From sequence record MK250027.1: a DNA stretch of 64,000 nt. One strand, written 5' to 3'. The notes under the pieces are model-generated. The model worked only from the letters and a program-made list of their open reading frames with translations. It had not been told where the DNA came from and ran no database searches. This document shows, one piece after another, positions 1,988-36,610 of the stretch. Position numbers and translations under genes: made by a program. How positions within the stretch are numbered: the first letter of the stretch is position 1; each line of letters starts with the position of its first letter.

Positions 1988-2000
1988 AATTAAATATATA

Positions 2001-2035
2001 AAAAATCCAAACAACTAGAAATTGTTTGGATTTTT
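2001..2035. terminator. Bidirectional intrinsic terminator
   Basis: AAAAATCCAAACAA / TTGTTTGGATTTTT inverted repeat between convergent genes. Confidence 0.8.
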
Positions 2036-2093
2036 ATATTATAAAAATAATTTATAAAGTTAACAGTGGAATATTTCTTATATTTAAAAACAT

Positions 2094-2570
2094 TTAATCA
2101 ATGCCTAATTTAATACGATTTGAAATGAGATTCCATACCGTATTGGTAATAAAGTTTTCCTTTAGTTTCTTACCAACTGCAGGTTCAATATCTGACTTAA
2201 ATGTTTCTACTACATATTTACCATTACCAGTTCTGAAAGCCTCGGTAATAGCTACAAGATTTTTCTTAGTTTGTTTCTCTATATAAAGACGAATATCTTC
2301 CTTAGTAGAGTTAGCACTAAGAGTAATCATATTTTCATTTAAAAGTTTGATGCCTGCCTTGTTAATACCTGTTTTAGGTGACCAGTATTCGAATACTTTC
2401 TTGGCCATTTCTTTTTTCTGATCAGCAGGAAGATCTGACATATTTCCAGTAATCATATATGTCTCCTTAAGTACGTTAATAACGGCTACTTTTTGAGATT
2501 CATATAATTTCTCACGAGCCTCAAGTACCTATTTTTTACTATTATTATATACTGTACTAAAACTTTTCAT
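2094..2570 (-). CDS. Hypothetical protein, 158 aa (TAG=Gln)
   Basis: Track ORF 2094..2456 extends through one TAG to ATG 2570 (MKSFSTVYNNSKKQVLEAREKLYES). Confidence 0.8.
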
Positions 2571-2603
2571 TTGCTTGATTTAAATGTTTTTATAATTATT
2601 ATT

Positions 2604-2614
2604 TTATTTATCTA
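2604..2614 (-). promoter_or_regulatory. TAGATAAATAA motif, putative phage (late-type) promoter
   Basis: Exact 11-mer about 35 nt upstream of ATG 2570; recurs at 8566, 8582, 15715 and 23869, each correctly oriented upstream of a start codon. Confidence 0.55.
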
Positions 2615-2629
2615 ACTTTTTGTAAAAAA

Positions 2630-3082
2630 TTATTTTCTGATATTCAGAACGAGCTTTGTATTTTTCGGTATTCGATTTAAAGCCCTTATTACTATTTTAT
2701 TATTATCACCATCCCACATATAATCACAATTAGGATCAGGATTTGATTTACTTATAACATCATAATATTGACAATAACCGAATGGAATAACATATTTCTC
2801 ATTAGGAATAACTTCAAATACAATATCTCTCATATCTTTAGTATAAAGAGATAATTTATCTATAGATTTTGTAGGACATATTTCTATAATATCTCCTGGA
2901 TAAAACTATGAGTTAGAATAAACAGATTTACCGTCAGAACAAATTTTACATTGATTTAAATTTGTCGGTATCATTGTTACTTTCTTTATGTTAATTTTAT
3001 CACGTGGTTCCTAACCATAAAATAATCCATACCATGATTTCTCATTTACAGATTTAAACTTTTTATTTGTTCTTTGTTTCAT
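2630..3082 (-). CDS. SET-domain-like protein with degenerate catalytic motifs, 150 aa (TAG=Gln)
   Basis: GKSVYSNSQFYPGDIIEICP...IPFGYCQYYD...DPNCDY...IVIRALNRIPKNTKL matches the small viral/bacterial SET layout; two TAGs read through. Confidence 0.6.
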
Positions 3083-3089
3083 AATTAAA

Positions 3090-3110
3090 NNNNNNNNNNN
3101 NNNNNNNNNN
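3090..3110. other. Assembly gap (21 N)
   Basis: Run of N. Confidence 1.
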
Positions 3111-3126
3111 TAATGTATTTTAAAAA

Positions 3127-4785
3127 TTAATTACGTTCTACAGCTTGTACGGCATTACTAGCTTTTTCTATTTCTGCTGGCATTCCTAAATTATTTTCAG
3201 ACGGTTTATCATTACCTTTAGTTTCGTCTTTATCGTTCTATATTTCTCCGTTATTATTTTTATATAATGAATCTGCTAAATCTTTTAATGTTGCGTCTGT
3301 ACCCATTTTCTTTTCTATATACTTATGTGCTTTATCTATTAAATTTTCTGTATTATTCTATTCATCTTCAAATAAGTATATATCATTATTTCTAAAATAT
3401 AAAACAGATTCTATTTTTATTTTACTTATAAAATACATTAAACTATAAAACATTGATAACCCATCATAAGGTTTATCATTTGAAATATAATCTAATATAG
3501 TTTTATATATATCAAATATATTTAACGAACCATCTATTACTTTAAACTATTTAAAAAATGATAAAATTTCTTTATTATCATTACTTAATAACAATTTAAA
3601 TGATTTAAAGAAACTATTATCTTTATTAATTATTTGAATTTTTAAACTATTTAAATTTATATTGAATAGATCTTGTAATTCATTAATAATATGTTCACCT
3701 ATACTTAGATTATCTTTCTCTCCATTTGTTGTATCATGACCATCTAACGTTTTTATATTTGTATAAAATAATTTAAATATTTCTTTACATAATATAGTTG
3801 TTGTCTACAATTTATTTGTTTTTTCATCTTTACCTATAACAACAGTTACTTTTGATGTATTTAATGTTTCCTTAATTTCATTTATACTATCTTCCAAATT
3901 TTCAGATTTTTCATTTAATGATAATAACGTATCTGATAATAATGTATTCCATTTTGTAAACTATTCATTAGTTATTACATCTAAATTCTATATATTTTCT
4001 AAGAATTTACTTACTGTTAATTTATCGGTTTTAAATACATCTTTATCCACATCAATCTGTTTTTTAAGGAATACATCTTTAATACCTTCTTTTATATCTA
4101 TATTTGAAATATTCTATTTGAAATAATCTATATATTCTTGTTCATCATCTTTTTTTAATAATTCTAATAATGTTGAATATATATCTTTATAACGCTATGT
4201 ATTTATATTATCCTATACATCTTTATTACCTAATGTATTATATATATTAATTGGAACTTCAAACTATGAAAATTTATCATCAATTAATTTATTATAATAT
4301 GAACTGAAATTATTAGAAAAAATAAATTGTAATATACTTATTAACGTTTTTTGAGAAATCATATTATTAAATGTATCAATAAACTATTTCATTTCATCAT
4401 CAGTTATTGGTTCAATATTATATAATTTATCTTTATCGATTTCTGTAGTTTCATTCTATATAATATATTTTATTATAGTTTTATATGATATATTTGAAAT
4501 ATCATTTTGACTTAACTATATATTATTTTTAAATATATCATTTTCTATAATTTGTGAAATTTTTTCATTTATTAAATTATTTGGTTCTAAGTAAATATTT
4601 AATGGCGTTATTCCACATTTTCTTAAAAACTAATTTAATTTAATTGCCTTATTTTTTATATCTGCATTTGTATTGTTATCATCATTTAATTCATTTATAA
4701 TATTACTAAATTCATTGAATAAATCAGTTGATAACATATTATGATACACCACATTATATATTATATTATCTATTTGCTATAACAT
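3127..4785 (-). CDS. Hypothetical protein, 552 aa (TAG=Gln)
   Basis: ATG 4785 (MLQQIDNIIYNVVYH) to TAA 3127; length divisible by 3; absent from the track because of frequent TAGs. Confidence 0.7.
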
Positions 4786-8655: not shown

Positions 8656-9555
8656 ATGAATGCAAAACCAATTATTAAATGGGTAGGTGGAAAAACCCAA
8701 TTATTAAATACAATAAATGATAATCTTCCACAAAACATATCACATTTTAACACATATATGGAACCATTCATTGGTGGTGCTGCAGTATTATTTTATATTG
8801 TTCCAAAATTGCCTAATATAAAAAATGTGTTTATAAATGACTTAAATTATAAATTGACAAATTTATATACAGTTGTGAAAAATAAACATTTGAAATTAAT
8901 TAATCAATTAAAAACAATACAGGAAGAATATAGAAAATCAGAAGATCCGAAAATGTTTTATTATAATACACGTGATTCATTCAATATATATGATATGAAT
9001 ACAGAGCAGGATGCAGATGTATTACATGCAGCTGAATTTATATTTTTAAATAAGACTTGTTTTAACGGATTATACAGGGAGAATTCGAAAGGTGAATTTA
9101 ATGTACCATGGAATAAGAATGTAAATGTTTGTATATGTGATGAAGAAAATATTAAAGCTGTACATAATTTTTTCATTAAATACAATGTTCAAATATCTAC
9201 CGGTACATATGATGAGTTTTTCAAAGGTAAAGGAATGTATATGAAAAATGCATTTGTTTATATGGATCCGCCTTATAGACCTATTACTAAATCATCTGCA
9301 TTTACGTCATATACAAAATCAGGATTTAATGATGAGAGTCAAAAGAATTTAAAAGTATGGTTTGATGTATTGAATAGTGAATGTGCATATTGTATGTTAA
9401 GCAATTCAGATCCTAAAAATTCTGATGTGGATGATACATTTTTTGATGACTTATATTCAGATTATAACATAATTAGAATAAATGCTAAGAGATCTATCAA
9501 TTCAAAAGGAAACGGACGAGGTAATATAACAGAAATATTGGTAAAGAATTATTAA
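8656..9555 (+). CDS. dam: DNA adenine methyltransferase (Dam/D12 class)
   Basis: KWVGGK, EPFIGG and DPPY motifs; no TAG in frame. Confidence 0.93.
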   Translation: MNAKPIIKWVGGKTQLLNTINDNLPQNISHFNTYMEPFIGGAAVLFYIVPKLPNIKNVFINDLNYKLTNLYTVVKNKHLKLINQLKTIQEEYRKSEDPKMFYYNTRDSFNIYDMNTEQDADVLHAAEFIFLNKTCFNGLYRENSKGEFNVPWNKNVNVCICDEENIKAVHNFFIKYNVQISTGTYDEFFKGKGMYMKNAFVYMDPPYRPITKSSAFTSYTKSGFNDESQKNLKVWFDVLNSECAYCMLSNSDPKNSDVDDTFFDDLYSDYNIIRINAKRSINSKGNGRGNITEILVKNY

Positions 9556-9586
9556 TAAAATAAATACTTAAACATATATCTGATAT

Positions 9587-10579
9587 ATGAAATTTATACA
9601 TAACCTACATGAATAGAATAATATATTATCATATAACGAAATATTAAATACTATTAATAATATTAATGAAGAATATCATGAAGTAACAAATTTTGATAAT
9701 ATGATAAAAGATGTTGCTAAACAAATATATTATTCTAATTATACTGATTTTTATACAGGTTGGAATTGGTTTATTAATGAACAAACATGTTTAAAAGTTA
9801 ATACAGAATATAAATCTGATAATACTGTTTATAAAGATAATATAGGTTGTCCTATATATATTAAATTTGATGATTTAGAAAACAATACGTATTTTGCTGT
9901 ATAGATGAGAGATAATACATATAACATACCTATATATGTTAACAAACATTATAACTTATCTATATAGCAATATGCATATAAATTAAAACATGAAATTACA
10001 CATATACGTACAATGTATTCTAAAATAGATTCAAATCCTTTAGATTCATTAAAGAATAGATCATCAAGTATTGAATTGGATAATATAAAATTAATAAATA
10101 ATAAACAATTTCCATTTATATATAATGTTTGTTATTTATTATCACCAACTGAATAGCAAGCACGTATAAATGAATATATATTTTTTATAAAAGATTATTT
10201 AAAAGAAAATGATATAGATAATGTAAACAGTCATAAATTAATAAATGAATTAATTGAAAAAGGATATGAACATACATTATTAAAAGATTTCTTTGATATA
10301 TATGAAAAATTAGAATTTATGGTAAATGCTTAGATTTATATATAGGTAATATCATTAGGATATGTGTTATAGAAATATAATTTATTTAAATCTAATATAA
10401 CAGATGCAGATTTACTGAGATTAGAATCTGATAGAACAGGAATGATATATAAGTATATTAAATCAGATGAAGATAATTCATATAAAATATTAGAGTTTTT
10501 AAAATAGAATTTATCTGATTACTATACAAAATTAAAAAACGTAACATACAAAACATTAAAAGAAAATAACATAATTTAA
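9587..10579 (+). CDS. HExxH metallopeptidase-like protein, paralog 1, 330 aa (TAG=Gln)
   Basis: ATG 9587 to TAA 10577-10579 through several TAGs; LKHEITH...SPTEQQAR. Confidence 0.7.
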
Positions 10580-10585
10580 TTATAT

Positions 10586-11059
10586 ATGAAGACTAATTTA
10601 AATGGTGGTTGTTTATTGCCAAATGAAGAAATTATTGTAAAGGATGGACTTGTATTGATGTCTGAAATTAAAGTAGGTGATAAAGTTTTATCACATGATG
10701 GTGATTACCATGAAGTAGAACATATATGGAATTTTGAGAAACCTACATACTATGTATCACTTTCAAACGGTGATCATATCGAATGTTCAAATACACATAG
10801 ATTCTTGGTAAATAAGAATAAGATTGAGAAGGAATCATCATGGAAAACTGCAGAAGAACTTCATGATGGAGATGAGATTTTCCAAATGAATCTCATTAAT
10901 ATTGATCCAAATGAGAAGATTAAATTTAATAAGTTGAAGATTGCCCGAATTTTCAAATCAGGAATTAATAATCCTGTGGTTGACATTACAGTAAAAGATA
11001 CACATACATATATCTCTGCGAACGGTATTGTCAATCATAATTCAGGATCTAATTTCTAA
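10586..11059 (+). CDS. Free-standing mini-intein (Hint domain) with minimal exteins
   Basis: MKTNLNGG|CLLPNEEI (block A), CSNTHRFL (block B, TxxH), VVDITVKDTHTYISANGIVNHN|SGSNF (blocks F/G with His-Asn-Ser); no endonuclease domain. Confidence 0.9.
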   Translation: MKTNLNGGCLLPNEEIIVKDGLVLMSEIKVGDKVLSHDGDYHEVEHIWNFEKPTYYVSLSNGDHIECSNTHRFLVNKNKIEKESSWKTAEELHDGDEIFQMNLINIDPNEKIKFNKLKIARIFKSGINNPVVDITVKDTHTYISANGIVNHNSGSNF

Positions 11060-11463
11060 TGGATTATAAAAATACATATTTAAAACCAGAAATTGCTTTT
11101 CTTCTCAAAAAACATCATTATGATATTTCAAAAACTAGATATATGATTAACAGGGATGGTGTGATAATTGAGTCTACCCCTGATTTAGATAAACATTATA
11201 ATCATCTTGAACTTGCATATAATCCTAACGCAAATGAAGTAATTAATTATTTTAAATCAAAAGGAATAATTATTCATATAAATGAAATAAAAGAAAATAA
11301 ATGGGAATGGATTATAACATTCAATAATAATGATAAAGCAATATATTCTGGTGAAACAGCAAATGGAAATTTAGGGCATAATCTTCCGGAATCACGACAA
11401 TATTTCAATAATGAAATAGATGCATATAACGATTGCATAATTGAATTAATAATTATAATTTAA
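11059..11463 (+). CDS. Hypothetical phage protein, probable paralog of 13026..13421
   Basis: TAATG coupling to the intein gene; YLKPEIAFLLKK resembles LVTNEIFEWLLN, and the C-termini are similar. Confidence 0.7.
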   Translation: MDYKNTYLKPEIAFLLKKHHYDISKTRYMINRDGVIIESTPDLDKHYNHLELAYNPNANEVINYFKSKGIIIHINEIKENKWEWIITFNNNDKAIYSGETANGNLGHNLPESRQYFNNEIDAYNDCIIELIIII

Positions 11464-11471
11464 AACAATAT

Positions 11472-11504
11472 GAGACTATAGAAATAAACTATAGTCTCTT
11501 TTTT
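11472..11504 (+). terminator. Intrinsic terminator
   Basis: GAGACTATAG-loop-CTATAGTCTC followed by a T run. Confidence 0.85.
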
Positions 11505-11510
11505 ATTTAA

Positions 11511-11530
11511 AATAAAAATATGTATCTTTG
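11511..11530 (+). promoter_or_regulatory. Bacteroidota-type -7 promoter element (TAnnTTTG), early-type
   Basis: AATAAAAATATGTATCTTTG upstream of the cca gene; nearly identical motifs at 30013 and 35876. Confidence 0.65.
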
Positions 11531-11549
11531 AAAAATAAAAAGAATAATT

Positions 11550-12821
11550 ATGGATAATAAAACATATTTAGTAATAAAAGATTATCTACGTATCATAATT
11601 AAAGATACTGAATTTGAAGATAATTTATTTGCTGTTGGTGGATGTTGTAGAGATGAAATCCTCGGTAATGATATTAAAGATTTAGATCTTGTTGTATCAC
11701 TTAATAATGGCGGTATTAAATTTGCAGAATGGTTAGAGAAAAATCATTATACAAAAGGAACCATTGTAACATATCCTCGTTTTGGAACTGCAATGTTTAG
11801 ACTTAAAGATTTTCCAGATGAAGAATTAGAAGTTGTTCAAACAAGAACAGAAATTTATAATTCAGATTCAAGAAAACCAACTACAACATATGGAAGTCTT
11901 AAAGAAGACTGTATGCGTCGAGATTTAACTATCAATGCAATTTATTATGATATATCAAACAGTAAAATGATTGATGTATGTGGTAGGTCATTTGATGATA
12001 TTAAAAATAAAGTAATTGTTACTCCATGTGACCCTGATAAAACATATATTGATGATCCTCTTAGAATTATGAGGTGTATTAGGTTCTCATGTAAGTTAGG
12101 TTGGGATATTGATAAAAATGTATTTGAAAGTATGAAAAGAAATGTAGATAGATTATCTATTATTTCAAAAGAAAGAATTAAAGATGAAGTTATGAAAATC
12201 TTTAAGTCTAATAATACGTTAAAAGGATTATGTTATATTAGAGATATTAATGCGATGAAATATATATTTCCTAATATGAGTATGTATTGTGGACCTACAT
12301 GTATTGAAAATAATTTTAAAAATATTGATACATTAAAAGATCCATATGTAAAACTTACTGTATTTAATCATAGTAATCCTGATTTAGATAAACAATTATA
12401 TGAACTTAAATTTTCAACTAATGAAATAAGAATTATTCTTAATTATATAAAATTATTTAACTATTCTATACATTGTAATACATTAAGTGATATTAGAGAA
12501 ATTCTTTATCTTTGTAAATCAAAAGACGTATTTAACAATGTATATGATATGTATAAAGTTATAGGATTTCATAAAAGATATATTGAATATGCGCATAATA
12601 ATATAGATACAGATGAATCATTATCTATAATGTTTAAATATAAGTTTCCTTTAAATGGTAATGATATTATGAATATATTTGATATTCATCCAAGTCCTGA
12701 AGTTAAAGAACTTATAGATAAGATGCATGAGTTTGTATATGAGAATCCATATCTTACAAAAGATGAACTTATTGAAAAGTTAAAAATATATAAAGAAACA
12801 AAATCTGATGAACAATGGTAA
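11550..12821 (+). CDS. cca: CCA-adding tRNA nucleotidyltransferase (class II / PolyA_pol family)
   Basis: VGGCCRD..DLDL, RRDLTINA and DDPLRIMRCIRF motifs; TAG-free. Confidence 0.9.
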   Translation: MDNKTYLVIKDYLRIIIKDTEFEDNLFAVGGCCRDEILGNDIKDLDLVVSLNNGGIKFAEWLEKNHYTKGTIVTYPRFGTAMFRLKDFPDEELEVVQTRTEIYNSDSRKPTTTYGSLKEDCMRRDLTINAIYYDISNSKMIDVCGRSFDDIKNKVIVTPCDPDKTYIDDPLRIMRCIRFSCKLGWDIDKNVFESMKRNVDRLSIISKERIKDEVMKIFKSNNTLKGLCYIRDINAMKYIFPNMSMYCGPTCIENNFKNIDTLKDPYVKLTVFNHSNPDLDKQLYELKFSTNEIRIILNYIKLFNYSIHCNTLSDIREILYLCKSKDVFNNVYDMYKVIGFHKRYIEYAHNNIDTDESLSIMFKYKFPLNGNDIMNIFDIHPSPEVKELIDKMHEFVYENPYLTKDELIEKLKIYKETKSDEQW

Positions 12822-12870
12822 TATTTACCATTATAATAAAAAGAATTATTAACTAAAATATATAAGAATT

Positions 12871-13020
12871 ATGAATTTAAATATTTCTCAAAGAGAAGGA
12901 ATTAAGAAGTGCCTTTATCAAGATTTGAAAAAGATGTATGATGCATTTATTCAAACTGATAAGAATGAAGTGGAAAAAGTGTTTAATGAATTTATTGATA
13001 AATGTGAACGTTATATTTAA
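12871..13020 (+). CDS. Small hypothetical protein, 49 aa
   Basis: MNLNISQREGIKKCLYQDLKKMYDAF... fills the operon gap; below the track length cutoff. Confidence 0.55.
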   Translation: MNLNISQREGIKKCLYQDLKKMYDAFIQTDKNEVEKVFNEFIDKCERYI

Positions 13021-13025
13021 TAATT

Positions 13026-13421
13026 ATGACATATTTTCAAAATTTAGTTACAAACGAAATATTTGAATGGTTATTGAATAATAAATTTCCTGCTGTCATA
13101 TGTTTTTATAATCATGGAAAGGAACAACTTTATTATACATTACCATATACAGATCCAAATTGGCAAAATTGCGATGCTTATTATAAACCAACATATTTTG
13201 ATGTATTACATTGGTTATTTAAAGAATATAATTTATATATCAATATAAATTCATATAATAATAAATTTTCAGTTCAAATTGAATATTTAACTAATCATAA
13301 AAATAAGTATTTTGGTAATTGCTGGGAAATTGGAGCGAATTGTAAAACTATTGAAGATTGTATTAAATCTGCAATAGAATATATTATTAAATGTGATATT
13401 TTAAATAAAATTAAATCATGA
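13026..13421 (+). CDS. Hypothetical phage protein
   Basis: Track ORF in a co-oriented operon; ATGA overlap with the next gene. Confidence 0.7.
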   Translation: MTYFQNLVTNEIFEWLLNNKFPAVICFYNHGKEQLYYTLPYTDPNWQNCDAYYKPTYFDVLHWLFKEYNLYININSYNNKFSVQIEYLTNHKNKYFGNCWEIGANCKTIEDCIKSAIEYIIKCDILNKIKS

Positions 13422-13606
13422 AATATATTAGGAAAGGACATATAGTAATATGTGACAATTGCGGTGCACATGTTCTCATTGAAAGTAAAAAGAAAGATAC
13501 TCATATGGACCATAATTGGAATCATACAAAGTATCTTCGTTATTTTACTTGTCCATGTTGTGGTGATGAAGTATATGCAGAATATCCTGAAGATGATCAA
13601 AATTAA
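13418..13606 (+). CDS. Small zinc-ribbon protein
   Basis: CDNCG...CPCCG; ATGA coupling. Confidence 0.7.
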   Translation: MKYIRKGHIVICDNCGAHVLIESKKKDTHMDHNWNHTKYLRYFTCPCCGDEVYAEYPEDDQN

Positions 13607-14145
13607 GTTAATGGTGAAAATAATTCTTTTTGCTCATTAATATATTTTTTAGCTTCTGGTAAATTATCAAATAATATATCATTCTCATCAGGTTGACAAT
13701 ATACCATATTGCCATTATCTTCTATTATATAGATTACACCAAATGGGTCTACCATCTGGGATGGTTCAATAGGTTTACTAAATATTATTTTCCTGATAGA
13801 ATTATCAACGATAACATAATATACATTTGCATTTGCGTCTATATTATCAGACCATTTACCTATGTAATTTATTTTATCATCATATGATGAAAGATTATTA
13901 TCCATTATATTATCGCCAAAAAATGATGCAAGATAATTATTATTTTGATTTACCTTATCTTGATTATCTCTTATTAGAAATTCAGATGTTAAATTAATTG
14001 ACGACTTATGATCATCTGGTATAAATATACCACCTATTACAATATCATCAAACTCATCTGAATCTTCTGTAGGATTTAACATCATATCACCTATATTTTT
14101 TAATTTTGGAATATATTTATGTTGAAGTTTGTAAGTATATTTCAT
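13603..14145 (-). CDS. Hypothetical protein, inverted relative to its neighbours
   Basis: 180-aa ORF with acidic, protein-like composition; its stop shares TTAA with the convergent gene. Confidence 0.7.
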   Translation of the reverse strand: MKYTYKLQHKYIPKLKNIGDMMLNPTEDSDEFDDIVIGGIFIPDDHKSSINLTSEFLIRDNQDKVNQNNNYLASFFGDNIMDNNLSSYDDKINYIGKWSDNIDANANVYYVIVDNSIRKIIFSKPIEPSQMVDPFGVIYIIEDNGNMVYCQPDENDILFDNLPEAKKYINEQKELFSPLT

Positions 14146-14181
14146 TTAATTTTAATTAATAATCTTTAAATATTTATTATA

Positions 14182-14478
14182 ATGACAATAACATATACAG
14201 CGTTCGATGGTAAAATCTTCGATAATAAAGAAGATTGCGAAAATTATGAAGATAAATTGAAATTACTTAGTGGCACTTATGATATACTTGATAAAATATT
14301 AAATAAACTTTATGGATATAAAGGTACTCTTTGGATTTGTGAAGAAAAAAATGAAATTGAACCACATTGTGGACAAGAATTACCAGGTCCAGGTGATATA
14401 TTATGTACAATTAATAATGAAGATTTAAATACATTATTTGTTATAAAGGGCTTACTTGAAAAATATAAAATTAAGTAA
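14182..14478 (+). CDS. Hypothetical phage protein
   Basis: MTITYTAFDGKIFDNKEDCENYE N-terminus typical of small phage proteins. Confidence 0.7.
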   Translation: MTITYTAFDGKIFDNKEDCENYEDKLKLLSGTYDILDKILNKLYGYKGTLWICEEKNEIEPHCGQELPGPGDILCTINNEDLNTLFVIKGLLEKYKIK

Positions 14479-14480
14479 TA

Positions 14481-14963
14481 ATGGAAACAGCAAGGCAAGT
14501 TATAGATAAAATTAAAAATCTATATATACAATGGTATAAAACGACATTATTTGATTCTACATCTCAAATGGGAATAAATGAACATAATGAATTACTGGAG
14601 TATTCAAAACAACATGTTCATAATTTTAGTATAGCAATGATGGAATTACTTGAACATCCAGATGATATGAATTATCATATTCCTGTAATTTGTTGTTATA
14701 TACTTCAAGAAGATTTTATTAAATTATATGAAAATAAAAAAGATAAATTACCATTAGATGATGATTATTGTTGGGATGAATGTAATTTATGGTTAAATTA
14801 TTTCAAATTAACAAAAAATATTGATTATTATAAAAAGTTTAAAGAATATAAAAAATATATTATATTACAGAGAACTTTAAACTATTTAATCCATTTACAG
14901 ATAAAGATCCAAATATTACATATGAAGAATATCTTAAGAAATGCGAAGATATTGATTCAGTAA
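14481..14963 (+). CDS. Hypothetical protein with a probable frameshift near 14850
   Basis: The -1 frame from 14852 to TGA 15028 (ITENFKLFNPFTDKDPNITYEEYLKKC) looks more protein-like than the annotated tail. Confidence 0.6.
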   Translation: METARQVIDKIKNLYIQWYKTTLFDSTSQMGINEHNELLEYSKQHVHNFSIAMMELLEHPDDMNYHIPVICCYILQEDFIKLYENKKDKLPLDDDYCWDECNLWLNYFKLTKNIDYYKKFKEYKKYIILQRTLNYLIHLQIKIQILHMKNILRNAKILIQ

Positions 14964-15011
14964 ATAAGTTTACAACTAAATTACGTAAAGATAATAATAC
15001 AAAATTAGTAT

Positions 15012-15362
15012 ATGAATACAAGAAATGAATTAAAAAAAATAATGAATGATTCTTTAAAACAAAATAATATCATTGATAAACAAGAGATACCAAATGTAAC
15101 AATACTTCCAGATTTATCAGATCCATCAGAATATAAACGATGGTTTAATATGGGTCCTAAAGAAGCATTGGTAAATCTTCAAAAATATGTGGATTTGAAC
15201 AAGAAAGATAATATTGATTTTATTAAAGATTTCAATTATCTTTATACAAATGGTGGTATTTCTGGTTGGAGTAAAATACCATATAAAACATTCTATAACA
15301 TTATTTATGGTAAACAAAGAGTAGATTTCAATGGTAATTTAACAGGTGATGAAAATAGTTAA
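15012..15362 (+). CDS. Hypothetical protein
   Basis: Track ORF within an operon. Confidence 0.65.
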   Translation: MNTRNELKKIMNDSLKQNNIIDKQEIPNVTILPDLSDPSEYKRWFNMGPKEALVNLQKYVDLNKKDNIDFIKDFNYLYTNGGISGWSKIPYKTFYNIIYGKQRVDFNGNLTGDENS

Positions 15363-15687
15363 ACATATTACTGAAGAACCTGAATATACTGCAGTTAAAT
15401 TAATAACAACTGATTGTTTAGGAATTATCCAATATAGTTTTAATGATAAAGATAATTATGTTTATATTTATAGTTTTTCAGTAGAGAACCATAATAGAGG
15501 TAAACATATAGGAACAGAATTATTTGAATATTGTTTAAATGAAATAAATTCATTAGATAAGAAAGAGATTCATTTAACAGTTAATAAGAATAATATTCAA
15601 TTAATTAATTTTTATAAACGATATGGATTTATAGTAGTTAATGATAATTATGAAGAATATTATGTTTATATGAAGTTAAATCTCTAA
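15349..15687 (+). CDS. GNAT-family acetyltransferase
   Basis: FSVENHNRGKHIGTELF (acetyl-CoA motif A), LTVNKNN and FYKRYGF motifs. Confidence 0.85.
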   Translation: MKIVKHITEEPEYTAVKLITTDCLGIIQYSFNDKDNYVYIYSFSVENHNRGKHIGTELFEYCLNEINSLDKKEIHLTVNKNNIQLINFYKRYGFIVVNDNYEEYYVYMKLNL

Positions 15688-15714
15688 TTCATTTAATTAT
15701 TTTTGAAATTAATT

Positions 15715-15725
15715 TAGATAAATAA
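15715..15725 (+). promoter_or_regulatory. TAGATAAATAA motif upstream of tnpB copy 1
   Basis: Exact 11-mer shared with four other upstream sites. Confidence 0.5.
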
Positions 15726-15747
15726 TATAAGAAATATGTTTAAGAAT

Positions 15748-15875
15748 TTGGCGATTGGTTTAAACTATTTTTATAATTTAGAATATAATATATAATTAAA
15801 GATATTTATAAATCGTTTATATTAATAATTTGTATCAATCGCCAATTTTTATACAAATTAAAATATAAACGATTT
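15748..15875 (+). repeat. Two interleaved inverted repeats (A-B-A'-B') in the tnpB leader
   Basis: TTGGCGATTG 15748-15757 / CAATCGCCAA 15836-15845; AAATCGTTTATATT 15810-15823 / AATATAAACGATTT 15862-15875. Confidence 0.8.
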
Positions 15876-15883
15876 TTTATTAT

Positions 15884-17014
15884 ATGATAAAGTCTATTAA
15901 AATACGAATATATCCTGATACTGTTTAGAAAGAATTCATTTCTAAATAGTTAGGTTGTTGTCGATTTATATATAATAAATTATTGTATTATAAGAAAACT
16001 TAGTATGAACAAAATAAGCAACAGATTTCTTGGAAAGAGTTAGGTAAATATTTGACTAATCTAAAGAAACAAGAAGAATATTTATTTCTAAATGGAGTAT
16101 ATAATGTATGTTTATAGCAATCTATAATGGATATGATTAAAGCATATGATAATTTCTTTAAATTACATAAAGGTTATCCTAAATTCAAATCTAAAAAAGA
16201 TACTAAGCAAAGTTGTAGATTTACAAATCAAATATTTAAAAAATCTAATAAAATAAATGGTAATAGGATAACATTAATAAAGCAGTTAAAGAATATATTA
16301 TTTAAATGCTCAAGAAAAGATGAGATATATTTAAATCATAATCAAGATAAAATTCATTCTGTTACTCTTATTAAAACATCTACAAACAAATATTATCTAT
16401 CAATATGTATTGATTATGATATTGTTTAGAAAAAGAAACTAAATAGTGTAATAGGATTAGATTTAGGAATAAAAGATTTTATTGTTGATTCAAATGGTAA
16501 TAGATATGAGAATAAACATTTTTATAAGAGTCAAGAAAAGAAATTAAAAAAATTATAGAAGTAGTTAAGCAAGAAATAGAAAGGAAGTAATAATAGGAAT
16601 AAAGTTAGAATTAAAATTGCAAAAGTTCATGAGAAGATAACAAATCAACGTAATGCGTATTTACATCAAATCACTTCAAAATTAGTTAATGAGAACCAAG
16701 TTATCTGTATTGAAGATTTAAATGTAAATGGAATGATGTCTAATCATAAACTTGCTAAATCTATTCAAGAGTTATCTTTATTTGAATTTAGACGACAACT
16801 TGAATATAAATGTAAATTGTATGGTAGAGATTTAGTTATAATAGATAGATTCTATCCTTCATCTAAAACATGTCATAATTGTGGATATATTTATAAAAAT
16901 TTAAAATTAAGTGAACGTGAATGGATATGTCCACAATGTGGTAAAGTTATAGATAGAGATTATAATGCTTCTTTAAATATTTTAGATGGTGGATTAAAAC
17001 AAATAAATTTATAA
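15884..17014 (+). CDS. tnpB: TnpB RNA-guided endonuclease (IS200/IS605 OrfB type), 376 aa, 8 TAG=Gln
   Basis: MIKSIKIRIYP HTH, VIGLDLGIK (RuvC-I), ICIEDLNV (RuvC-II), CHNCG/CPQCG zinc finger, DRDYNASLNI (RuvC-III); TAGs fall at conserved Gln sites (CLQQS, KLQKQLSKKQKGS). Confidence 0.95.
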
Positions 17015-17040
17015 TTATTTTAATATTTTAAATATAAATA

Positions 17041-17150
17041 GGGAAGAGCTCGTCCGAATTTACGCTTGTGGAGATACCAACTATGGATGACTAAATTGCA
17101 TTTTATGTAATTATACTAAAAAGTAGTGTGTCTATGAAACAAGAAACACA
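17041..17150 (+). ncRNA. Putative TnpB omegaRNA scaffold / element right end
   Basis: GC-richer island GGGAAGAGCTCGTCCGAATTTACGCTTGTGGAG...CTAAAAAGTAGTG...TGAAACAAGAA resembling tnpB 3' ends; boundaries approximate. Confidence 0.65.
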
Positions 17151-17182
17151 GGTTTTTAAAAATATAATTTAAAACTAAAACT

Positions 17183-17329
17183 ATGAACATTGAAAAAGCG
17201 TTAAGAAATTTAAAGAAAGTAAAAAATGAAATGGAAATAGAATGTTTATATAAAACTAATGTTGAATATAAAGCACGTCCATGGATGGAACTTATTGGTG
17301 ATGCTATTTCTTTTCTTGATGGTGATTAA
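17183..17329 (+). CDS. Small hypothetical protein, 48 aa
   Basis: MNIEKALRNLKKVKNEMEIECF... ATG to TAA, below the track cutoff. Confidence 0.55.
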   Translation: MNIEKALRNLKKVKNEMEIECLYKTNVEYKARPWMELIGDAISFLDGD

Positions 17330-17359
17330 AAATAATTAATAAAAATTAATAGAAATTAA

Positions 17360-17683
17360 ATGATAGATCCAAGTTATACATTATATCCGGAAGTTGCAGA
17401 TGCTACAAATTTATATTTTCATGATGAGCCTTATGCTTATTGGGTTGAAAATATGAATTATAATTTTTGTAATTGGGTTTTATATAAAGAATATAATAAT
17501 TATAGTTCTGTATGTAACCCTAATGATTGCATTGCAGGCATAAGCTATGAGGAAGTAATAGATGAGTTAAAAAATTCATGGTCATATAGAGATCAAGATA
17601 GAGAAATGTTAATTCGTACATTTAGACAACGTTCATTAGGTGATACTGAATATAATTTTGAAGACTTTATAGATGAAGATTAA
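17360..17683 (+). CDS. Hypothetical protein
   Basis: Track ORF followed by a terminator. Confidence 0.7.
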   Translation: MIDPSYTLYPEVADATNLYFHDEPYAYWVENMNYNFCNWVLYKEYNNYSSVCNPNDCIAGISYEEVIDELKNSWSYRDQDREMLIRTFRQRSLGDTEYNFEDFIDED

Positions 17684-17715
17684 TTTAATTACAGTACATC
17701 CCTACTGGAAATAAA

Positions 17716-17772
17716 AATAACGTGAAAATTCTTAAGTTTTTCTTAAAAATTCTTAAGTTTTTCACGTTATTT
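17716..17772. terminator. Bidirectional terminator with an internal tandem duplication
   Basis: AATAACGTGAAAA...TTTTCACGTTATT arms enclosing two copies of AAAATTCTTAAGTTTTTC. Confidence 0.7.
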
Positions 17773-17791
17773 TTATATATTTTTATATGTT

Positions 17792-19708
17792 TTATGAATT
17801 GTTTACTATTTTCTCAACTTCTTCTCGCTTCTTATTTGAAACTATCCATCCAGGAGTCTTAACACCATTGATATTCAAGAATTTATTATATTTACAACCT
17901 ATTTCTTTTAACTGATCTTTAATAGGTGCAATATCTTTATAATCTCCATATATAGCAATAGCTCTATCTGAATAATCATAAATATGAACATTACTATTAT
18001 TAACTGGTTTTTCTTCAACAGGTTCTGAAGCAACTTTCTTTGGTCTTCCCCTACGTTTCTTTATTGCAGAATCAATAGAAGTTGTTTCATCATCTTTTAC
18101 GACTCTTACTTTTTTCTTTTCTTCTTTTTGTTTTGCTTTAAGTTCTGCTTTTAATCGTTTAGCTTCTTCCTTTCGCTCTTCAATTATCTTTGCTCTACGT
18201 TCTTCTACCGGTTTAACAATAGTATCACGCATTGTAACAGTTCCACCTTTTTCCATCTTGAATGATGTATGGTCTAACCATTTACAAAATGCAGAATACG
18301 TCTTATATTCATCTTTAATACTTAATCTCTTCATAATAGTATAAGAGATAAATTTATCACCAAGAGATTTAATATATATAGTCCAATTATTTCCAAAATA
18401 TGTTTGTTTTTCTTTAAGATATTTCAAACAATTCTGTTTCATCAATTCATCATCCTCTGCTTTATCTGATGCTTTAAGATTAACCTTATCTATATTTGAT
18501 TTATTTCTAATTAATTCATTTGAAGATGTTTCATTTGATGGTTCCACATATTCATGATGTGGTCCTTTCTTTTCATAATAGCAATCTAAAAACCAATCTT
18601 TAGATGTTAATATGGTTTTCCATTGTGGCTTAGTAGGTTTCCATCTTCTACAATTAGCTGCGAATTTATATGGTCCTAATTGAATCCATATACCAGCACC
18701 TTTACCAGGAAATCCACCAGCAACAAAATCTAATTTAGGTAATATATCCATTGACAAGCCTTCAAATGACATATAAGGTAAAACTCTCCAAGGCCATATT
18801 TCGGTTCTAAACCATATTTTATCACATTTCGGTAAACCAACAAAATTTATTTTCTTACCTATATTATCTAATTCCTGATATGGTTCTTGCTTTGAACGCT
18901 CATCTCGTAACTCCATTTGAATATCATAATTTCCATCGGGTAATCCTATAAAATTATATGTTTTTGGTAAACCTTGATATGTATAAGTATTATTTCTGAA
19001 TGTATCATTTACTTTTTTTATAAATGAATAATCATTCATATTAAAACATTCTTGTAATCCAATACCATCAGCGGATATAATCTCTACAGAATCATCTATC
19101 CAACATCTCAATAAGTCTACTGAAACTTTTGGTTTCGTGTTAGCATACCATGTATTTGAATTATATACAGTTTCAAATAATTTCTTTTCTTTTATTTTAT
19201 CACCATCAATACGAAGGTTCTTTGGATAAATTCCTTTTAATCCAATACTGTCAAAATTTATATTCTTTAAATCCAATACATTTGATTTAGCTTCATCTGA
19301 TTTTGTATCACCAAATCTACCTATTTCTACATTAAATCTCATCAAAACGTTATTAATGCTATATTCTTCTAATTCATCAATAAATTTTTGTGCGCATTCC
19401 AATGTATTAAATGAAACATATGTAAGATAATATTTTGGATTGTCTTTTTCACTTGTATTATAATAAAATGCAACTGTATCATTATCAACGTCAGCATATA
19501 CATGTTTATCATTTTCAACACATCTTGTATATAAGCCTCGTCTTGCACTAAATGTTTGATCAGTTAAATATTGTTCAATCCATTTAAGCATATTTTTACT
19601 CATATTATTAAGCATGTTAGATGTTTCATTATCATCTGTTGTACCAATTACATCTTCAAAATCATCATCGAACAAACTTTCTACCAAACGTTTAATTCCT
19701 TTATTCAT
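17792..19708 (-). CDS. 638-aa hypothetical protein with a K/E-rich linker and a small C-terminal domain; TAG-free
   Basis: Intact track ORF; C-terminal IYDYSDRAIAIYGD...IKDQLKEIGCKYN...PGWIV module. Confidence 0.85.
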   Translation of the reverse strand: MNKGIKRLVESLFDDDFEDVIGTTDDNETSNMLNNMSKNMLKWIEQYLTDQTFSARRGLYTRCVENDKHVYADVDNDTVAFYYNTSEKDNPKYYLTYVSFNTLECAQKFIDELEEYSINNVLMRFNVEIGRFGDTKSDEAKSNVLDLKNINFDSIGLKGIYPKNLRIDGDKIKEKKLFETVYNSNTWYANTKPKVSVDLLRCWIDDSVEIISADGIGLQECFNMNDYSFIKKVNDTFRNNTYTYQGLPKTYNFIGLPDGNYDIQMELRDERSKQEPYQELDNIGKKINFVGLPKCDKIWFRTEIWPWRVLPYMSFEGLSMDILPKLDFVAGGFPGKGAGIWIQLGPYKFAANCRRWKPTKPQWKTILTSKDWFLDCYYEKKGPHHEYVEPSNETSSNELIRNKSNIDKVNLKASDKAEDDELMKQNCLKYLKEKQTYFGNNWTIYIKSLGDKFISYTIMKRLSIKDEYKTYSAFCKWLDHTSFKMEKGGTVTMRDTIVKPVEERRAKIIEERKEEAKRLKAELKAKQKEEKKKVRVVKDDETTSIDSAIKKRRGRPKKVASEPVEEKPVNNSNVHIYDYSDRAIAIYGDYKDIAPIKDQLKEIGCKYNKFLNINGVKTPGWIVSNKKREEVEKIVNNS

Positions 19709-19770
19709 AATTTAAATTATAATTAAAAATTCACATTTTATTATTTATTAAAAAAGGGTAACAATTAGTT

Positions 19771-20955
19771 TTATCTAACTGTACCCTTACCAAATGTTTT
19801 ATTAATTTCTCGTTTAATATCTGTAATCGTATTCTTTATATAATCCTTATCATATTGTAAAATGTAATCTTTAAATCTATTTCCATTATACTTATATCCT
19901 TTAAGTTCATGAAATAGTTGCAAAACTTCATTTAATATATATGTATAATTCTCATCATTATAAAATTTCAATACATCATAAATCTTTTGTCTAATATCAT
20001 TAAACTATTTTTTCAATATATAAAAATCACCTTCTGTATTATGAATCATTCTATTAATTCCTTTTGTAGTATAGCCATTTGATATAAGTAATGCTCTATC
20101 AGTTAATGTATTATACTTATTATATGGTGTTCTAATTTTTAAATTTAAAACTGTATTGAAATTTGTATCTGATTTTTGTCCTAATTTCTTAAATGTTCCA
20201 TCATTATTAAATTCACAATCAATAGCTATAGGTGCTGGCATTACATATGTTTTAAAGTATTCAGCTTCACCTGTTTCTGCATTACAGAAATAAAAGAAAA
20301 ATACAGTAGTAATATTTCTAAGATTTGTTTGACATTTATTTTCTTTTACTTCCAACTATCGCATATCATTAAGAATCTAATCAATACCTTTCATTGCATT
20401 GTTAACTTTACCTTTAAATGTATTATCATCGAAGAAACTACATAAAACAGATTTAACCTCTATATATGTTTCATCTCCATTAGGCTAAGTTAACTTAATA
20501 TCTGGACATTCATTTCTTCCATTTGGTTCATGCTCAATTTTATATCCAATGTTTTCAGGAAATATACAGTGCATTATATGTTCAGAAGCAGAATGACATA
20601 AATTCATAAGTAACGAATCTGTATATACAACCTTATTATCTTTGGACATAAACTATGTTAATGTTCCTCTGAAAGTTATCTTATTTGAATCTTTATTAGT
20701 AACAGTAAAAATAGGATCTTCTAAACCAAATGTCATATAATTATCATCTGTATATTCATGAATATCATTATATAACATATAGAACTATCGTATATACTCA
20801 TCATCTGCAGAGTATTCCAACCACTACTTAATACTGTCTTCCAAATCATTAGCGACAAAAATACTATCATCCAATGATGATAGAAACTATCGTCTTTCTT
20901 CAGGATTATTAATACATTTCAGAATACGCTACGGACTTTTTGATTTGTTACTCAT
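19771..20955 (-). CDS. PD-(D/E)xK nuclease-like protein, 394 aa (TAG=Gln)
   Basis: ATG 20955 to TAA 19771 joins track ORFs 20005..20355 and 19771..19971; ECPDIKLTQPNGDETYIEVKSV motif. Confidence 0.6.
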
Positions 20956-21002
20956 TTATAAATTTTGATTAATTTTATTATGATTATTATAAATCAAATC
21001 TT

Positions 21003-26098: not shown

Positions 26099-26201
26099 NN
26101 NNNNNNNNNNNNNNNNNNNNNNNNNNNNNNNNNNNNNNNNNNNNNNNNNNNNNNNNNNNNNNNNNNNNNNNNNNNNNNNNNNNNNNNNNNNNNNNNNNNN
26201 N
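26099..26201. other. Assembly gap (103 N)
   Basis: Run of N. Confidence 1.
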
Positions 26202-27269: not shown

Positions 27270-27797
27270 TCAAAAGAACTTTGTTTCATTCTCTGTCTAA
27301 TAGAATATCATTATCTATATTTTTCNNNNNNNNNNNNNNNNNNNNNNNNNNNNNNNNNNNNNNNNNNNNNNNNNNNNNNNNNNNNNNNNNNNNNNNNNNN
27401 NNNNNNNNNNNNNNNNNNNNNNNNNNNNNNNNNNNNNNNNNNNNNNNNNNNNNNNNNNNNNNNNNNNNNNNNNNNNNNNNNNNNNNNNNNNNNNNNNNNN
27501 NNNNNNNNNNNNNNNNNNNNNNNNNNNNNNNNNNNNNNNNNNNNNNNNNNNNNNNNNNNNNNNNNNNNNNNNNNNNNNNNNNNNNNNNNNNNNNNNNNNN
27601 NNNNNNNNNNNNNNNNNNNNNNNNNNNNNNNNNNNNNNNNNNNNNNNNNNNNNNNNNNNNNNNNNNNNNNNNNNNNNNNNNNNNNNNNNNNNNNNNNNNN
27701 NNNNNNNNNNNNNNNNNNNNNNNNNNNNNNNNNNNNNNNNNNNNNNNNNNNNNNNNNNNNNNNNNNNNNNNNNNNNNNNNNCGAAAAAAGTCTACAT
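27270..27797 (-). CDS. Hypothetical gene spanning the N gap (about 175 aa)
   Basis: ATG TAG ACT TTT TTC (MQTFF) right of the gap is in frame with EKIQIMIFYQTENETKFF-TGA left of the gap. Confidence 0.45.
27326..27781. other. Assembly gap (456 N)
   Basis: Run of N. Confidence 1.
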
Positions 27798-36508: not shown

Positions 36509-36580
36509 GCATGATTAGCTAAGTGGTACAGCAGGAAACTTTAAACTTCCAGATCACGGGTTCGATCCCTGTATCATGCA
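36509..36580 (+). tRNA. tRNA with anticodon UUA (ochre suppressor-type), no encoded CCA
   Basis: Acceptor GCATGAT/ATCATGC, D arm with GG, anticodon stem GGAAA/CTTCC, loop CT-TTA-AA (TTA at 36541-36543), T arm ACGGG-TTCGATC-CCTGT, discriminator A. Confidence 0.9.
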
Positions 36581-36610
36581 CATCTAAATTTAAAATAAAA
36601 GTATAAAACT

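What the first reader, a model, noticed from the sequence alone, without database searches (positions are those of the whole stretch)
15715..17175. TnpB copy 1 looks domesticated: recoded, under a phage promoter motif, omegaRNA uncoupled from the CDS
Seen: intact D/E/D RuvC residues and zinc finger; 8 in-frame TAG-Gln codons; no tnpA nearby; TAGATAAATAA upstream. The usual C-terminal tail (IGKSSSEFTLVEIPTMDD, encoded at about 17038-17091) is cut off from the ORF by a short AT-rich stretch with the stop at 17012-17014, and TATAAATA directly precedes the scaffold. Known: TnpB uses an omegaRNA from its 3' end plus flanking guide sequence. Inference: the protein cannot be made under host code 11, so it is confined to the recoded stage of infection and may have been co-opted as a phage RNA-guided nuclease against host DNA or competing phages.
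Basis: partly seen in the sequence, partly recalled or inferred. Interest (0 to 1): 0.72.

Follow-up and report, generated by a model that had tools for sequence, protein, structure and literature searches.

The report
Amber-recoded TnpB insertion element in megaphage
The gene is an intact RNA-guided nuclease (TnpB) with its guide-RNA gene, one copy of a selfish element family that has multiplied inside Lak megaphages of Prevotella and can only be translated under the phage's own genetic code, so it looks like a phage-adapted mobile element and not a nuclease the phage has tamed.

Summary
The window is Prevotella phage Lak-B8 (MK250027.1, bases 310001-374000). ORF 15884-17014 encodes a 376-aa TnpB with 8 in-frame TAG (Gln) codons, RuvC D193/E277/D359 and two CxxC pairs. 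Neither complete Lak genome searched has an IS200-type TnpA. A conserved guide-RNA scaffold starts 20 nt after the stop codon.

"Domesticated" is not supported. The locus is one member of a large TnpB-only family that is endemic to Lak phages:
- Lak-B8 has three full copies plus one guide-RNA-only module, and at least 13 distinct insertion sites were found across Lak genomes.
- Two copies are present or absent between 98-99% identical Lak-B genomes.
- dN/dS between lineages is 0.11-0.25. TAG alternates with CAA/CAG, and one TAG is shared by all lineages, so recoding is old.
- The right end lies at 17182. The guide is therefore the start of the next phage gene (17183 onward), not 17150-17175.

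Best reading: a selfish homing-type OMEGA element confined to code-15 phages.

Unexplained extras are a 5' leader with two covarying, crossing helices, variable left ends, and 44-73 nt target duplications at 5 of 15 sites. IS200/IS605 chemistry does not produce such duplications.

The parts
15346..15687 (+). Upstream neighbour: a 113-aa GNAT-like acetyltransferase gene with no TAG. It is Lak-B specific and is absent, together with the TnpB element, at the orthologous site of all non-B Lak genomes examined.
   Evidence: PHROG acetyltransferase 8.8e-13
15688..15713 (+). AT-rich stretch before the conserved left end. It is partly shared with other copies (TATTTTTGAAAATAAT-like). The exact left boundary is uncertain: it falls about 30 nt upstream of TTAGAT in most copies and 0-3 nt upstream in L219.
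15714..15883 (+). Left end / 5' leader. It has a conserved box TTAGATAAATAATATAAGAAATA (15714-15736) followed by two crossing helices. It is conserved in 9 LE-bearing lineages.
15749..15846 (+). Leader helix 1: 15749-15759 pairs with 15834-15846 (GGCGATTGGT / ATCAATCGCC). The stem sequence differs between lineages but stays complementary.
   Evidence: 6 of 13 pairs changed on both sides; for coordinates
15812..15873 (+). Leader helix 2: 15812-15823 pairs with 15862-15873. It crosses helix 1, and its 3' arm is followed by a T-run and then the ATG.
   Evidence: 6 of 12 pairs changed on both sides, 99% of cells paired
15884..17014 (+). tnpB CDS: 376 aa, 8 TAG=Gln, RuvC D193/E277/D359, zinc finger C330/C333/C349/C352, stop TAA.
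17015..17033 (+). AT-rich spacer between the stop codon and the scaffold. Its length varies between copies.
17034..17158 (+). Guide-RNA (omegaRNA) scaffold. It includes the vestigial tail-coding stretch 17038-17091, a variable covarying hairpin (about 17094-17113) and the GAAACAAGAAA block (17136-17146, the 'MKQE' of relatives' tails).
17151..17182 (+). Terminal hairpin (GGTTTT ... AAAACT) plus a short tail, forming the right end of the element. The hairpin is kept in every copy by compensatory changes. The 24 nt after GGTTTTT are near-identical (one substitution) in two copies at different loci.
17183..17202 (+). Most likely guide: the first 16-20 nt of the flank, which is the start of the next phage ORF (17183-17329, 48 aa).
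   Evidence: inference from the right-end boundary; unique in Lak-B8
36509..36581 (+). tRNA with anticodon TTA (a suppressor type). It is not part of the element. The TAG-reading tRNA(CTA) lies outside the window at Lak-B8 415017-415089.

Best explanation
Window 15714-17182 is an intact copy of a TnpB-only (IS1341-type) OMEGA insertion element of the IS200/IS605 kind. The element belongs to a family that has lived and multiplied in Lak megaphage genomes long enough to take up the phage's code 15.

Parts, in order:
- a left end with a promoter-like box and a structured leader;
- tnpB;
- a short spacer;
- a roughly 150-nt guide-RNA scaffold that ends in a hairpin at 17182.

The transcript would run on into the flank, so the guide is the start of the next phage gene.

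TnpB can only be translated once the phage's tRNA(CTA) reads TAG as Gln, so the nuclease acts only inside infected cells in the recoded phase. There it most likely behaves as a selfish RNA-guided homing nuclease. It cuts copies of the Lak genome, or co-infecting Lak relatives, that lack the element at that site, and recombination with an element-bearing genome restores or spreads it.

Shown: the identity and intactness of the parts, family membership, multi-copy and polymorphic state, purifying selection, and age of recoding. Inferred: expression timing, guide position, cleavage and homing.
For: - **Identity:**
- **Source genome:** Lak-B8, 100% match.
- **Family size:** more than 120 distinct 90%-identity clusters at 83-100% identity, all 375-380 aa, many on 540-556 kb contigs. 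The nearest other relatives are at most 54% identical.
- **Copies in Lak-B8:** 3 full copies plus 1 scaffold-only module. Lak-A1 and Lak-C1 copies sit at other loci. Further sites are L095, L096, L108, L109, L112 and L219.
- **Presence/absence between near-identical genomes:** Lak-B1/B3/B4 have a copy at about 230.5 kb and Lak-B4 has one at about 515 kb; both are absent in Lak-B8 with clean empty sites.
- **Selection:** dN/dS is 0.11-0.25 at dS 0.5-1.3.
- **Recoding:** TAG alternates with CAA/CAG, and codon 15 is TAG in all 11 lineages.
- **Ends:** left end, scaffold and right end are conserved, with compensatory changes.
- **Gene conversion between copies:**
- **Concept:** TnpA-independent homing between co-infecting phages is discussed in PMC13565253.
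Against: - No RNA data exist, so neither the guide RNA nor its ends are shown.
- No TAM could be derived from the filled/empty pairs.
- Copy 1 is fixed in the Lak-B genomes examined, and no genome with an empty copy-1 site next to the GNAT-like gene was found. All non-B genomes lack both, so homing at this site is not demonstrated.
- How new sites are colonised without TnpA is unknown.
- Long target duplications and variable left ends do not fit simple homing or IS200/IS605 transposition.
- Recurrent loss of the left end with retention of an intact gene (B8_92k, B8_218k, B4_515k, L216) could mean that some copies are kept for a phage function.
Confidence: 0.62

Rival explanations
1. One reading: copy 1 has been exapted by the phage as an RNA-guided nuclease used in the recoded (late) phase against host DNA or competing phages.
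For: - It is fixed at one site in the Lak-B genomes examined.
- The catalytic site is intact and under purifying selection.
- No TnpA is present.
- TAG codons tie expression to the phage.
- Several paralogues have lost the left end but keep the gene and scaffold.
- A scaffold-only module could supply a second guide in trans.
Against: - All the supposed signs of domestication are shared with polymorphic, mobile copies.
- Copy 1 keeps the full left end.
- The flank that would serve as guide is the phage's own next gene and is unique in Lak-B8.
- There is no array or extra guides nearby.
- Known exapted TnpBs are mostly nuclease-dead (PMC10691335).
- Guide matches to host genomes were not tested.
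Confidence: 0.13
2. It is an ordinary non-autonomous IS200/IS605 element moved by peel-and-paste, with a Y1 TnpA supplied in trans by IS elements of the Prevotella host. TnpB serves only to restore excised copies.
For: - It scores as IS200/IS605-type TnpB.
- There are AT-rich palindromes near both ends and a subterminal right-end hairpin kept by compensation.
- Most LE-bearing copies show no significant target duplication.
- The host genus carries related TnpB genes (Segatella sinensis, 42% identity).
Against: - No TnpA is found in two complete Lak genomes.
- The Segatella relative is also TnpB-only.
- 44-73 nt direct duplications flank 5 of 15 insertions, including one full-length copy, whereas the family makes no target duplications (PMC13565253).
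- Left ends are variable while the right end is constant.
- No consistent TAM lies 5' of the left end.
Confidence: 0.17
3. It is a decaying relic: an old insertion with no present activity, kept by chance.
For: One polymorphic copy (Lak-B1, 230 kb) has an in-frame TAA at codon 219. The B8_218k scaffold has lost its variable hairpin.
Against: The ORFs are intact in nearly all of 30 or more copies. dN/dS is 0.11-0.25. Catalytic and zinc residues are invariant. The scaffold and leader keep their pairing through compensatory changes.
Confidence: 0.05

Closest known systems
ISDra2 TnpB with its omegaRNA (IS200/IS605, Deinococcus radiodurans; PDB 8bf8, 8exa, 8h1j)
   Same: The domain order is the same, with RuvC D/E/D and a zinc finger, and the proteins align end to end (E 1.7e-62). 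The guide RNA is encoded at the 3' end of the element and reads out into the flank.
   Different: - ISDra2 has a TnpA partner, and its ORF overlaps the scaffold and carries a 39-aa tail.
- The Lak gene stops 9 residues after the NIL motif of RuvC-III, and its scaffold starts 20 nt later.
- It has 8 TAG sense codons.
- It has a structured 170-nt leader.
IS1341-type (TnpB-only) members of IS200/IS605
   Same: They carry only tnpB plus ends, are non-autonomous, and occur in several copies per genome.
   Different: The Lak family is resident in a phage that uses code 15, and no TnpA is found in two complete genomes. Long target duplications and variable left ends occur at several sites, which this family is not known to make.
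Free-standing homing endonuclease genes of T4-like phages (Seg, Mob), i.e. intronless homing
   Same: It is a small nuclease gene wedged between conserved phage genes, present or absent between close relatives, and expected to spread by cutting the element-free allele during co-infection (PMC13565253).
   Different: Target recognition would be by RNA guide and not by protein. The element carries its own ends and guide-RNA gene and is multi-copy.
Exapted TnpB derivatives (for example nuclease-dead regulators and type V Cas12 effectors)
   Same: It is a TnpB without a transposase partner, and some Lak copies have lost the left end.
   Different: The catalytic residues are intact, there is no CRISPR array, no conserved partner gene was seen beside the copies whose neighbours were read, and the family is still polymorphic.

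Membership tests
TnpB (OMEGA RNA-guided endonuclease) | Profile match above the curated cut-off | tested here: met
   NF040570 scores 353.5 bits against a cut-off of 100. The stricter NF038281 model scores 384 against 425, which is below its cut-off. PHROG 506 matches at 6.9e-126.
TnpB (OMEGA RNA-guided endonuclease) | RuvC D/E/D triad and CxxC...CxxC zinc finger | tested here: met
   D193, E277, D359, C330, C333, C349 and C352 align to ISDra2 TnpB and are invariant in 12 relatives.
TnpB (OMEGA RNA-guided endonuclease) | Guide-RNA scaffold at the 3' end of the element | tested here: met
   17034-17182 is conserved across 11 lineages, with conserved long-range stems and some compensatory pairs. 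It is homologous to the tail-coding scaffold of relatives. The RNA itself has not been observed.
TnpB (OMEGA RNA-guided endonuclease) | TAM-dependent RNA-guided DNA cleavage | not testable with these tools
   This needs biochemistry. No TAM could be derived from the junctions.
IS200/IS605 autonomous element (IS605 type) | Y1 HUH transposase TnpA in the element or genome | tested here: not met
   NF033573 has no match in Lak-B8 (551,627 bp) or Lak-A1 (541,664 bp), while the control matched in 5 of 14 genomes. Serine-recombinase TnpA was not tested.
IS200/IS605 autonomous element (IS605 type) | Insertion without target-site duplication | tested here: inconclusive
   Five of 15 sites have 44-73 nt flanking direct repeats far above a mismatched-pair null. 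The other 10, including the window copy, have none above chance.
IS200/IS605 autonomous element (IS605 type) | Subterminal hairpins at both ends and a fixed TAM 5' of the left end | tested here: inconclusive
   The right-end hairpin is kept by compensation in all copies. Left-end AT palindromes are weak, the left boundary is variable, and there is no consistent TAM.
IS1341-type non-autonomous TnpB element | tnpB as the only gene between conserved ends, in several copies | tested here: met
Exapted / domesticated TnpB | Immobile, single conserved locus across diverged genomes, often with a dead nuclease or a fixed partner gene | tested here: not met
   Copy 1 is found in Lak-B only. The family is multi-copy and polymorphic, the triad is intact, and no shared neighbour was seen among the loci whose neighbouring genes were listed.
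Type V CRISPR-Cas effector | Adjacent CRISPR array | tested here: not met
   There is no array within 12000-21000, and the Cas12f2 and C2c8 models score far below their cut-offs.

The most novel reading that the evidence does not exclude
The Lak TnpB family spreads to new sites without any TnpA, by a copying process anchored at the guide-RNA (right) end. The right end is constant and abuts the flank. The left end is variable: full, cut at the promoter box, cut near the ATG, or scaffold only. Several insertions are flanked by 44-73 nt duplications of the target. This would be a new, TnpB-centred mode of mobility, for example break-induced or template-switch copying started at a TnpB cut. Its element family is sealed inside code-15 phages by its own TAG codons.
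Probability: 0.2. Interest if true: 0.85.

Novelty: new variant of a known kind. Interest (0 to 1): 0.6.

Why it matters
- TnpB elements are the ancestors of Cas12 and are among the most abundant genes known. Here a whole family has adapted to a phage's alternative genetic code, so it can be expressed only where TAG is read as Gln. That is a natural genetic-code barrier around a mobile element, and it gives a built-in timing switch for an RNA-guided nuclease.
- Neither of the two main Lak papers mentions a transposase or transposon in its main text (one of them was also checked for TnpB), and no paper in the held library combines TnpB with recoded phages.
- The family offers many natural guide/flank pairs, a compact 376-aa nuclease with an AT-rich scaffold, and a test case for TnpA-independent spread (homing) in phage populations.
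- The odd insertion signatures, if real, bear on how TnpB-only elements move, which is an open question.

Tried and rejected
1. **Short 14-22 nt 'target duplications'.** I first read these at the Lak-A1 473 kb, A1 169 kb and Lak-B1 230 kb sites. They do not exceed a null of mismatched left/right flanks, so I dropped them as general evidence.
2. **Guide-similarity-driven choice of new sites.** Right flanks beyond the ATG are no more alike than random Lak gene starts (p = 0.87).
3. **Promoter/leader motifs as genome-wide repeats.** AAAACTAAAACTATG (15 hits with up to 2 mismatches, against 12 in a shuffle) and TAGATAAATAA (13 against 9) are hardly enriched. Only about 10 sites share the longer box upstream of genes.
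4. **Second copy in the window.** None was found, and five other ORFs tested are not TnpB.
5. **Rfam.** No family matches 15600-17300 even at E of 1.
6. **Sigma-70 promoter and terminator scans.** These were below shuffle expectation.
7. **RNA runs.** None hold the locus.
8. **P0007 (92% identical).** I used it hoping for a recent transposition pair. It proved to be the 92 kb site with a converted CDS.
9. **Host TnpA via the Segatella relative.** Its neighbour is a polysaccharide deacetylase, not a transposase.
10. **Own assembly.** It is not held, and the nearest IMG/VR record has no TnpB match.

Full report
**Source and code**

Window 14500-18500 is 100% identical to Prevotella phage Lak-B8 (MK250027.1, 324500-328500), a 551,627-bp megaphage from baboon faeces. 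The window is record 310001-374000.

Lak phages are published as using code 15, TAG=Gln, with a tRNA(CTA) and RF2 (PMC6784885). The genome shows this independently:
- Reading TAG as sense raises ORF coverage of the window from 39.6 to 67.7 kb.
- Lak-B8 carries a tRNA(CTA) at 415017-415089 and a tRNA(TTA) at window 36509-36581.
- In aligned TnpB paralogues, TAG alternates almost only with CAA/CAG.

**The observation**

Under TAG=Q, 15884-17014 is a 376-aa ORF with 8 TAG codons, the first at codon 15.

It is a TnpB. NCBIfam guided_TnpB scores 353 bits (cut-off 100) and PHROG 506 matches at 6.9e-126. It aligns over residues 3-367 with the solved ISDra2 TnpB at E 1.7e-62.

D193, E277, D359 and the two CxxC pairs are present and invariant among relatives.

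More distant TnpBs carry just such tails in frame: IGKSSPEFKPVE, SSQEFTPVE..VDCPTVDD....MKQE... However, about a third of the relatives I read by eye also stop soon after RuvC-III, and all Lak copies have the stop.

**It is one of a family**

Lak-B8 holds three full copies: 325884-327011 (+, this one), 219705-218581 (-) and 94054-92927 (-). It also holds a scaffold-only module at about 186.82-186.97 kb.

Lak-A1, A2 and C1 carry copies 81-85% identical in DNA at quite different places, and the match to the window covers only about 15687-17158. IMG/VR and ENA Lak contigs add further sites: L095/L216, L096, L108, L109, L112 and L219/L220.

The protein database holds more than 120 distinct 90%-identity clusters at 83-100% identity, all 375-380 aa, many on 540-556 kb contigs. 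The next relatives are at most 54% identical.

Nearly all copies are intact, with 0-17 TAG codons.

**Mobility**

Among Lak-B genomes whose flanks at these sites are 98-99.8% identical to Lak-B8, B1, B3 and B4 have an extra full copy at about 230.5 kb, and B4 has another at about 515.4 kb. Lak-B8 has clean empty sites at both places.

The sites filled in Lak-A1 are empty in Lak-B8.

One ENA genome has, at the 92-kb site, a CDS 91.6% like the window copy where Lak-B8 has 85%. This indicates gene conversion between paralogues.

Copy 1 itself is at the same site in the six Lak-B genomes searched in full (B1, B3, B4, B8) or covered by three IMG/VR contigs, and the remaining Lak-B records match the window stretch at 99% or more. 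In every non-B genome examined, window ~15355 joins directly to ~17165. Both the GNAT-like gene (15346-15687) and the element are therefore Lak-B additions.

**Selection and age**

Pairwise dN/dS between lineages is 0.11-0.25 at dS 0.5-1.3. Codon 15 is TAG in all 11 lineages, and other TAG positions come and go against CAA/CAG.

The family therefore diversified inside code-15 genomes under protein-level constraint.

In the window, the gene is one of only two TAG-bearing genes in the otherwise TAG-free block 8656-19708.

**Anatomy of the left end**

The left end is conserved from TTAGATAAATAATATAAGAAATA (15714 onward) to the ATG in nine lineages.

Two helices, 15749-15759/15834-15846 and 15812-15823/15862-15873, cross each other:
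- 92% of cells pair, against about 40% when the partner is slid.
- 12 of 25 pairs show changes on both sides.
- None of 500 shuffles reaches the observed values.

Helix 2 is followed by a T-run just before the ATG. No Rfam family matches.

**Anatomy of the right end**

The scaffold (17034-17158) has conserved long-range stems, a variable hairpin that stays complementary in each lineage, and the GAAACAAGAAA block.

A terminal hairpin follows (GGTTTT...AAAACT). It is retained in every copy through compensatory changes: TGTTTTT/AAAAACA, TGTTTTA/TAAAACA, TGTTTATATA/TATATAAACA, GTTTTTAT/ATAAAAAC. A Campylobacterales relative has the same layout, with a hairpin after GAAACAGGAAG.

L112 and L219 share all but one of the 24 nt after GGTTTTT at different loci, so that stretch belongs to the element.

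In the window the right end is therefore 17182, and the flank begins with the ATG at 17183. In 7 of 14 sites the flank begins with the start codon of the next gene.

The 16-nt flank is unique in Lak-B8.

**The promoter motif**

Exact TAGATAAATAA is barely enriched, with 13 copies against 9 in a shuffle. A longer box does recur 32-65 nt upstream of about ten other Lak genes and one tRNA. The exact 17-mer TTTAGATAAATAATATA occurs at only one other place, upstream of a 378-aa gene.

It is plausible as a Lak promoter, but it is a family-wide part of the element's left end.

**What does not fit the textbook**

No IS200-type TnpA is present in two complete Lak genomes.

Five of 15 sites (B8_92k, B8_218k, B4_515k, L095/L216 and the scaffold-only module) are flanked by 44-73 nt direct repeats of target sequence. 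Their scores are 28.5-65.5, against a null maximum of 27 from mismatched flanks. IS200/IS605 elements make no target duplications (PMC13565253).

The left boundary varies:
- about 30 nt before the box in most copies;
- at the box in L219;
- an internal left-end deletion in L216, at the same site as the full-length L095;
- 19 and 8 nt before the ATG in B8_218k and B8_92k;
- exactly at the scaffold start in the solo module.

The right end is constant. I cannot explain the duplications. The L216 case shows that at least some left-end loss happened after insertion.

**Verdict**

The sequence observation is right. 'Confined to the recoded stage' is a sound inference. 'Domesticated' is not supported.

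The best reading is a phage-adapted, selfish TnpB/guide-RNA element that persists and spreads by RNA-guided homing among Lak genomes. An unresolved, possibly new, way of reaching new sites remains open.

**Handling of masked sequence**

To search for paralogues I fetched the Lak-B8 record in pieces. I re-masked the three stretches that are N in the window (3090-3110, 26099-26201, 27326-27781) before any analysis. I did not read or use those letters. One weak motif hit that overlapped the first stretch was left unexamined.

Noticed in passing
Lak-B8 186.82-186.97 kb (-), locus L009 (outside the window): A guide-RNA scaffold with no tnpB and no left end. It starts exactly at the scaffold 5' end (AATAGGG), is intact, and is flanked by a 46-nt direct repeat of the upstream gene's 3' end. 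It is also present in Lak-B1, B3 and B4.
   Followed up: partly
window 36509-36581 (+): A tRNA with anticodon TTA (it would read TAA), in addition to the tRNA(CTA) elsewhere in Lak-B8. The polymorphic Lak-B1 230-kb TnpB copy has an in-frame TAA at codon 219. Whether TAA is ever read through was not examined.
   Followed up: no
window 9587-10579 (+): A 330-aa ORF with 8 TAG codons (TAG/Gln 0.62), standing alone with TnpB in the TAG-free block 8656-19708. It has no NCBIfam or PHROG match and may be another inserted gene.
   Followed up: partly
window 15346-15687 (+): A small GNAT-like acetyltransferase gene, overlapping the end of the upstream gene. It was found only in Lak-B genomes and is absent, together with the TnpB element, from Lak-A1 and three IMG/VR Lak relatives.
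   Followed up: partly
L004 reverse strand 850-960; Lak-B8 for example 230817-230896, 290502-290599, 198088-198177, 125948-126005: A repeat of roughly 90 nt with about 30 copies (77-96% identity) scattered over Lak-B8. It is unrelated to the TnpB element.
   Followed up: no
Lak-A1 292.6-293.5 kb (L008); Lak-C1 210.4-211.4 kb (L079) and 256.5-257.4 kb (L084): Two further TnpB lineages, about 52% identical to the window protein, with only 0-1 TAG codons (377 and 420 aa). They are possibly more recent arrivals from standard-code genomes.
   Followed up: partly
L214 (ENA contig, 385,609 bp), 2000-3244: At the 92-kb insertion site this genome has a CDS 91.6% identical to the window copy, while its ends match the 92-kb copy. 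This indicates gene conversion between paralogous elements.
   Followed up: partly
Lak-B8 530988-532124 (-) and its upstream region (outside the window): A 378-aa gene with 1 TAG, preceded by the exact 17-mer TTTAGATAAATAATATA and then a hairpin, about 190 nt upstream of its ATG. This is the same layout as the TnpB leader, but the protein is unrelated.
   Followed up: partly
window 3090-3110, 26099-26201, 27326-27781: Masked N stretches. A weak match of the left-end box (record 313085-313133) overlaps the first one and was deliberately not examined.
   Followed up: no
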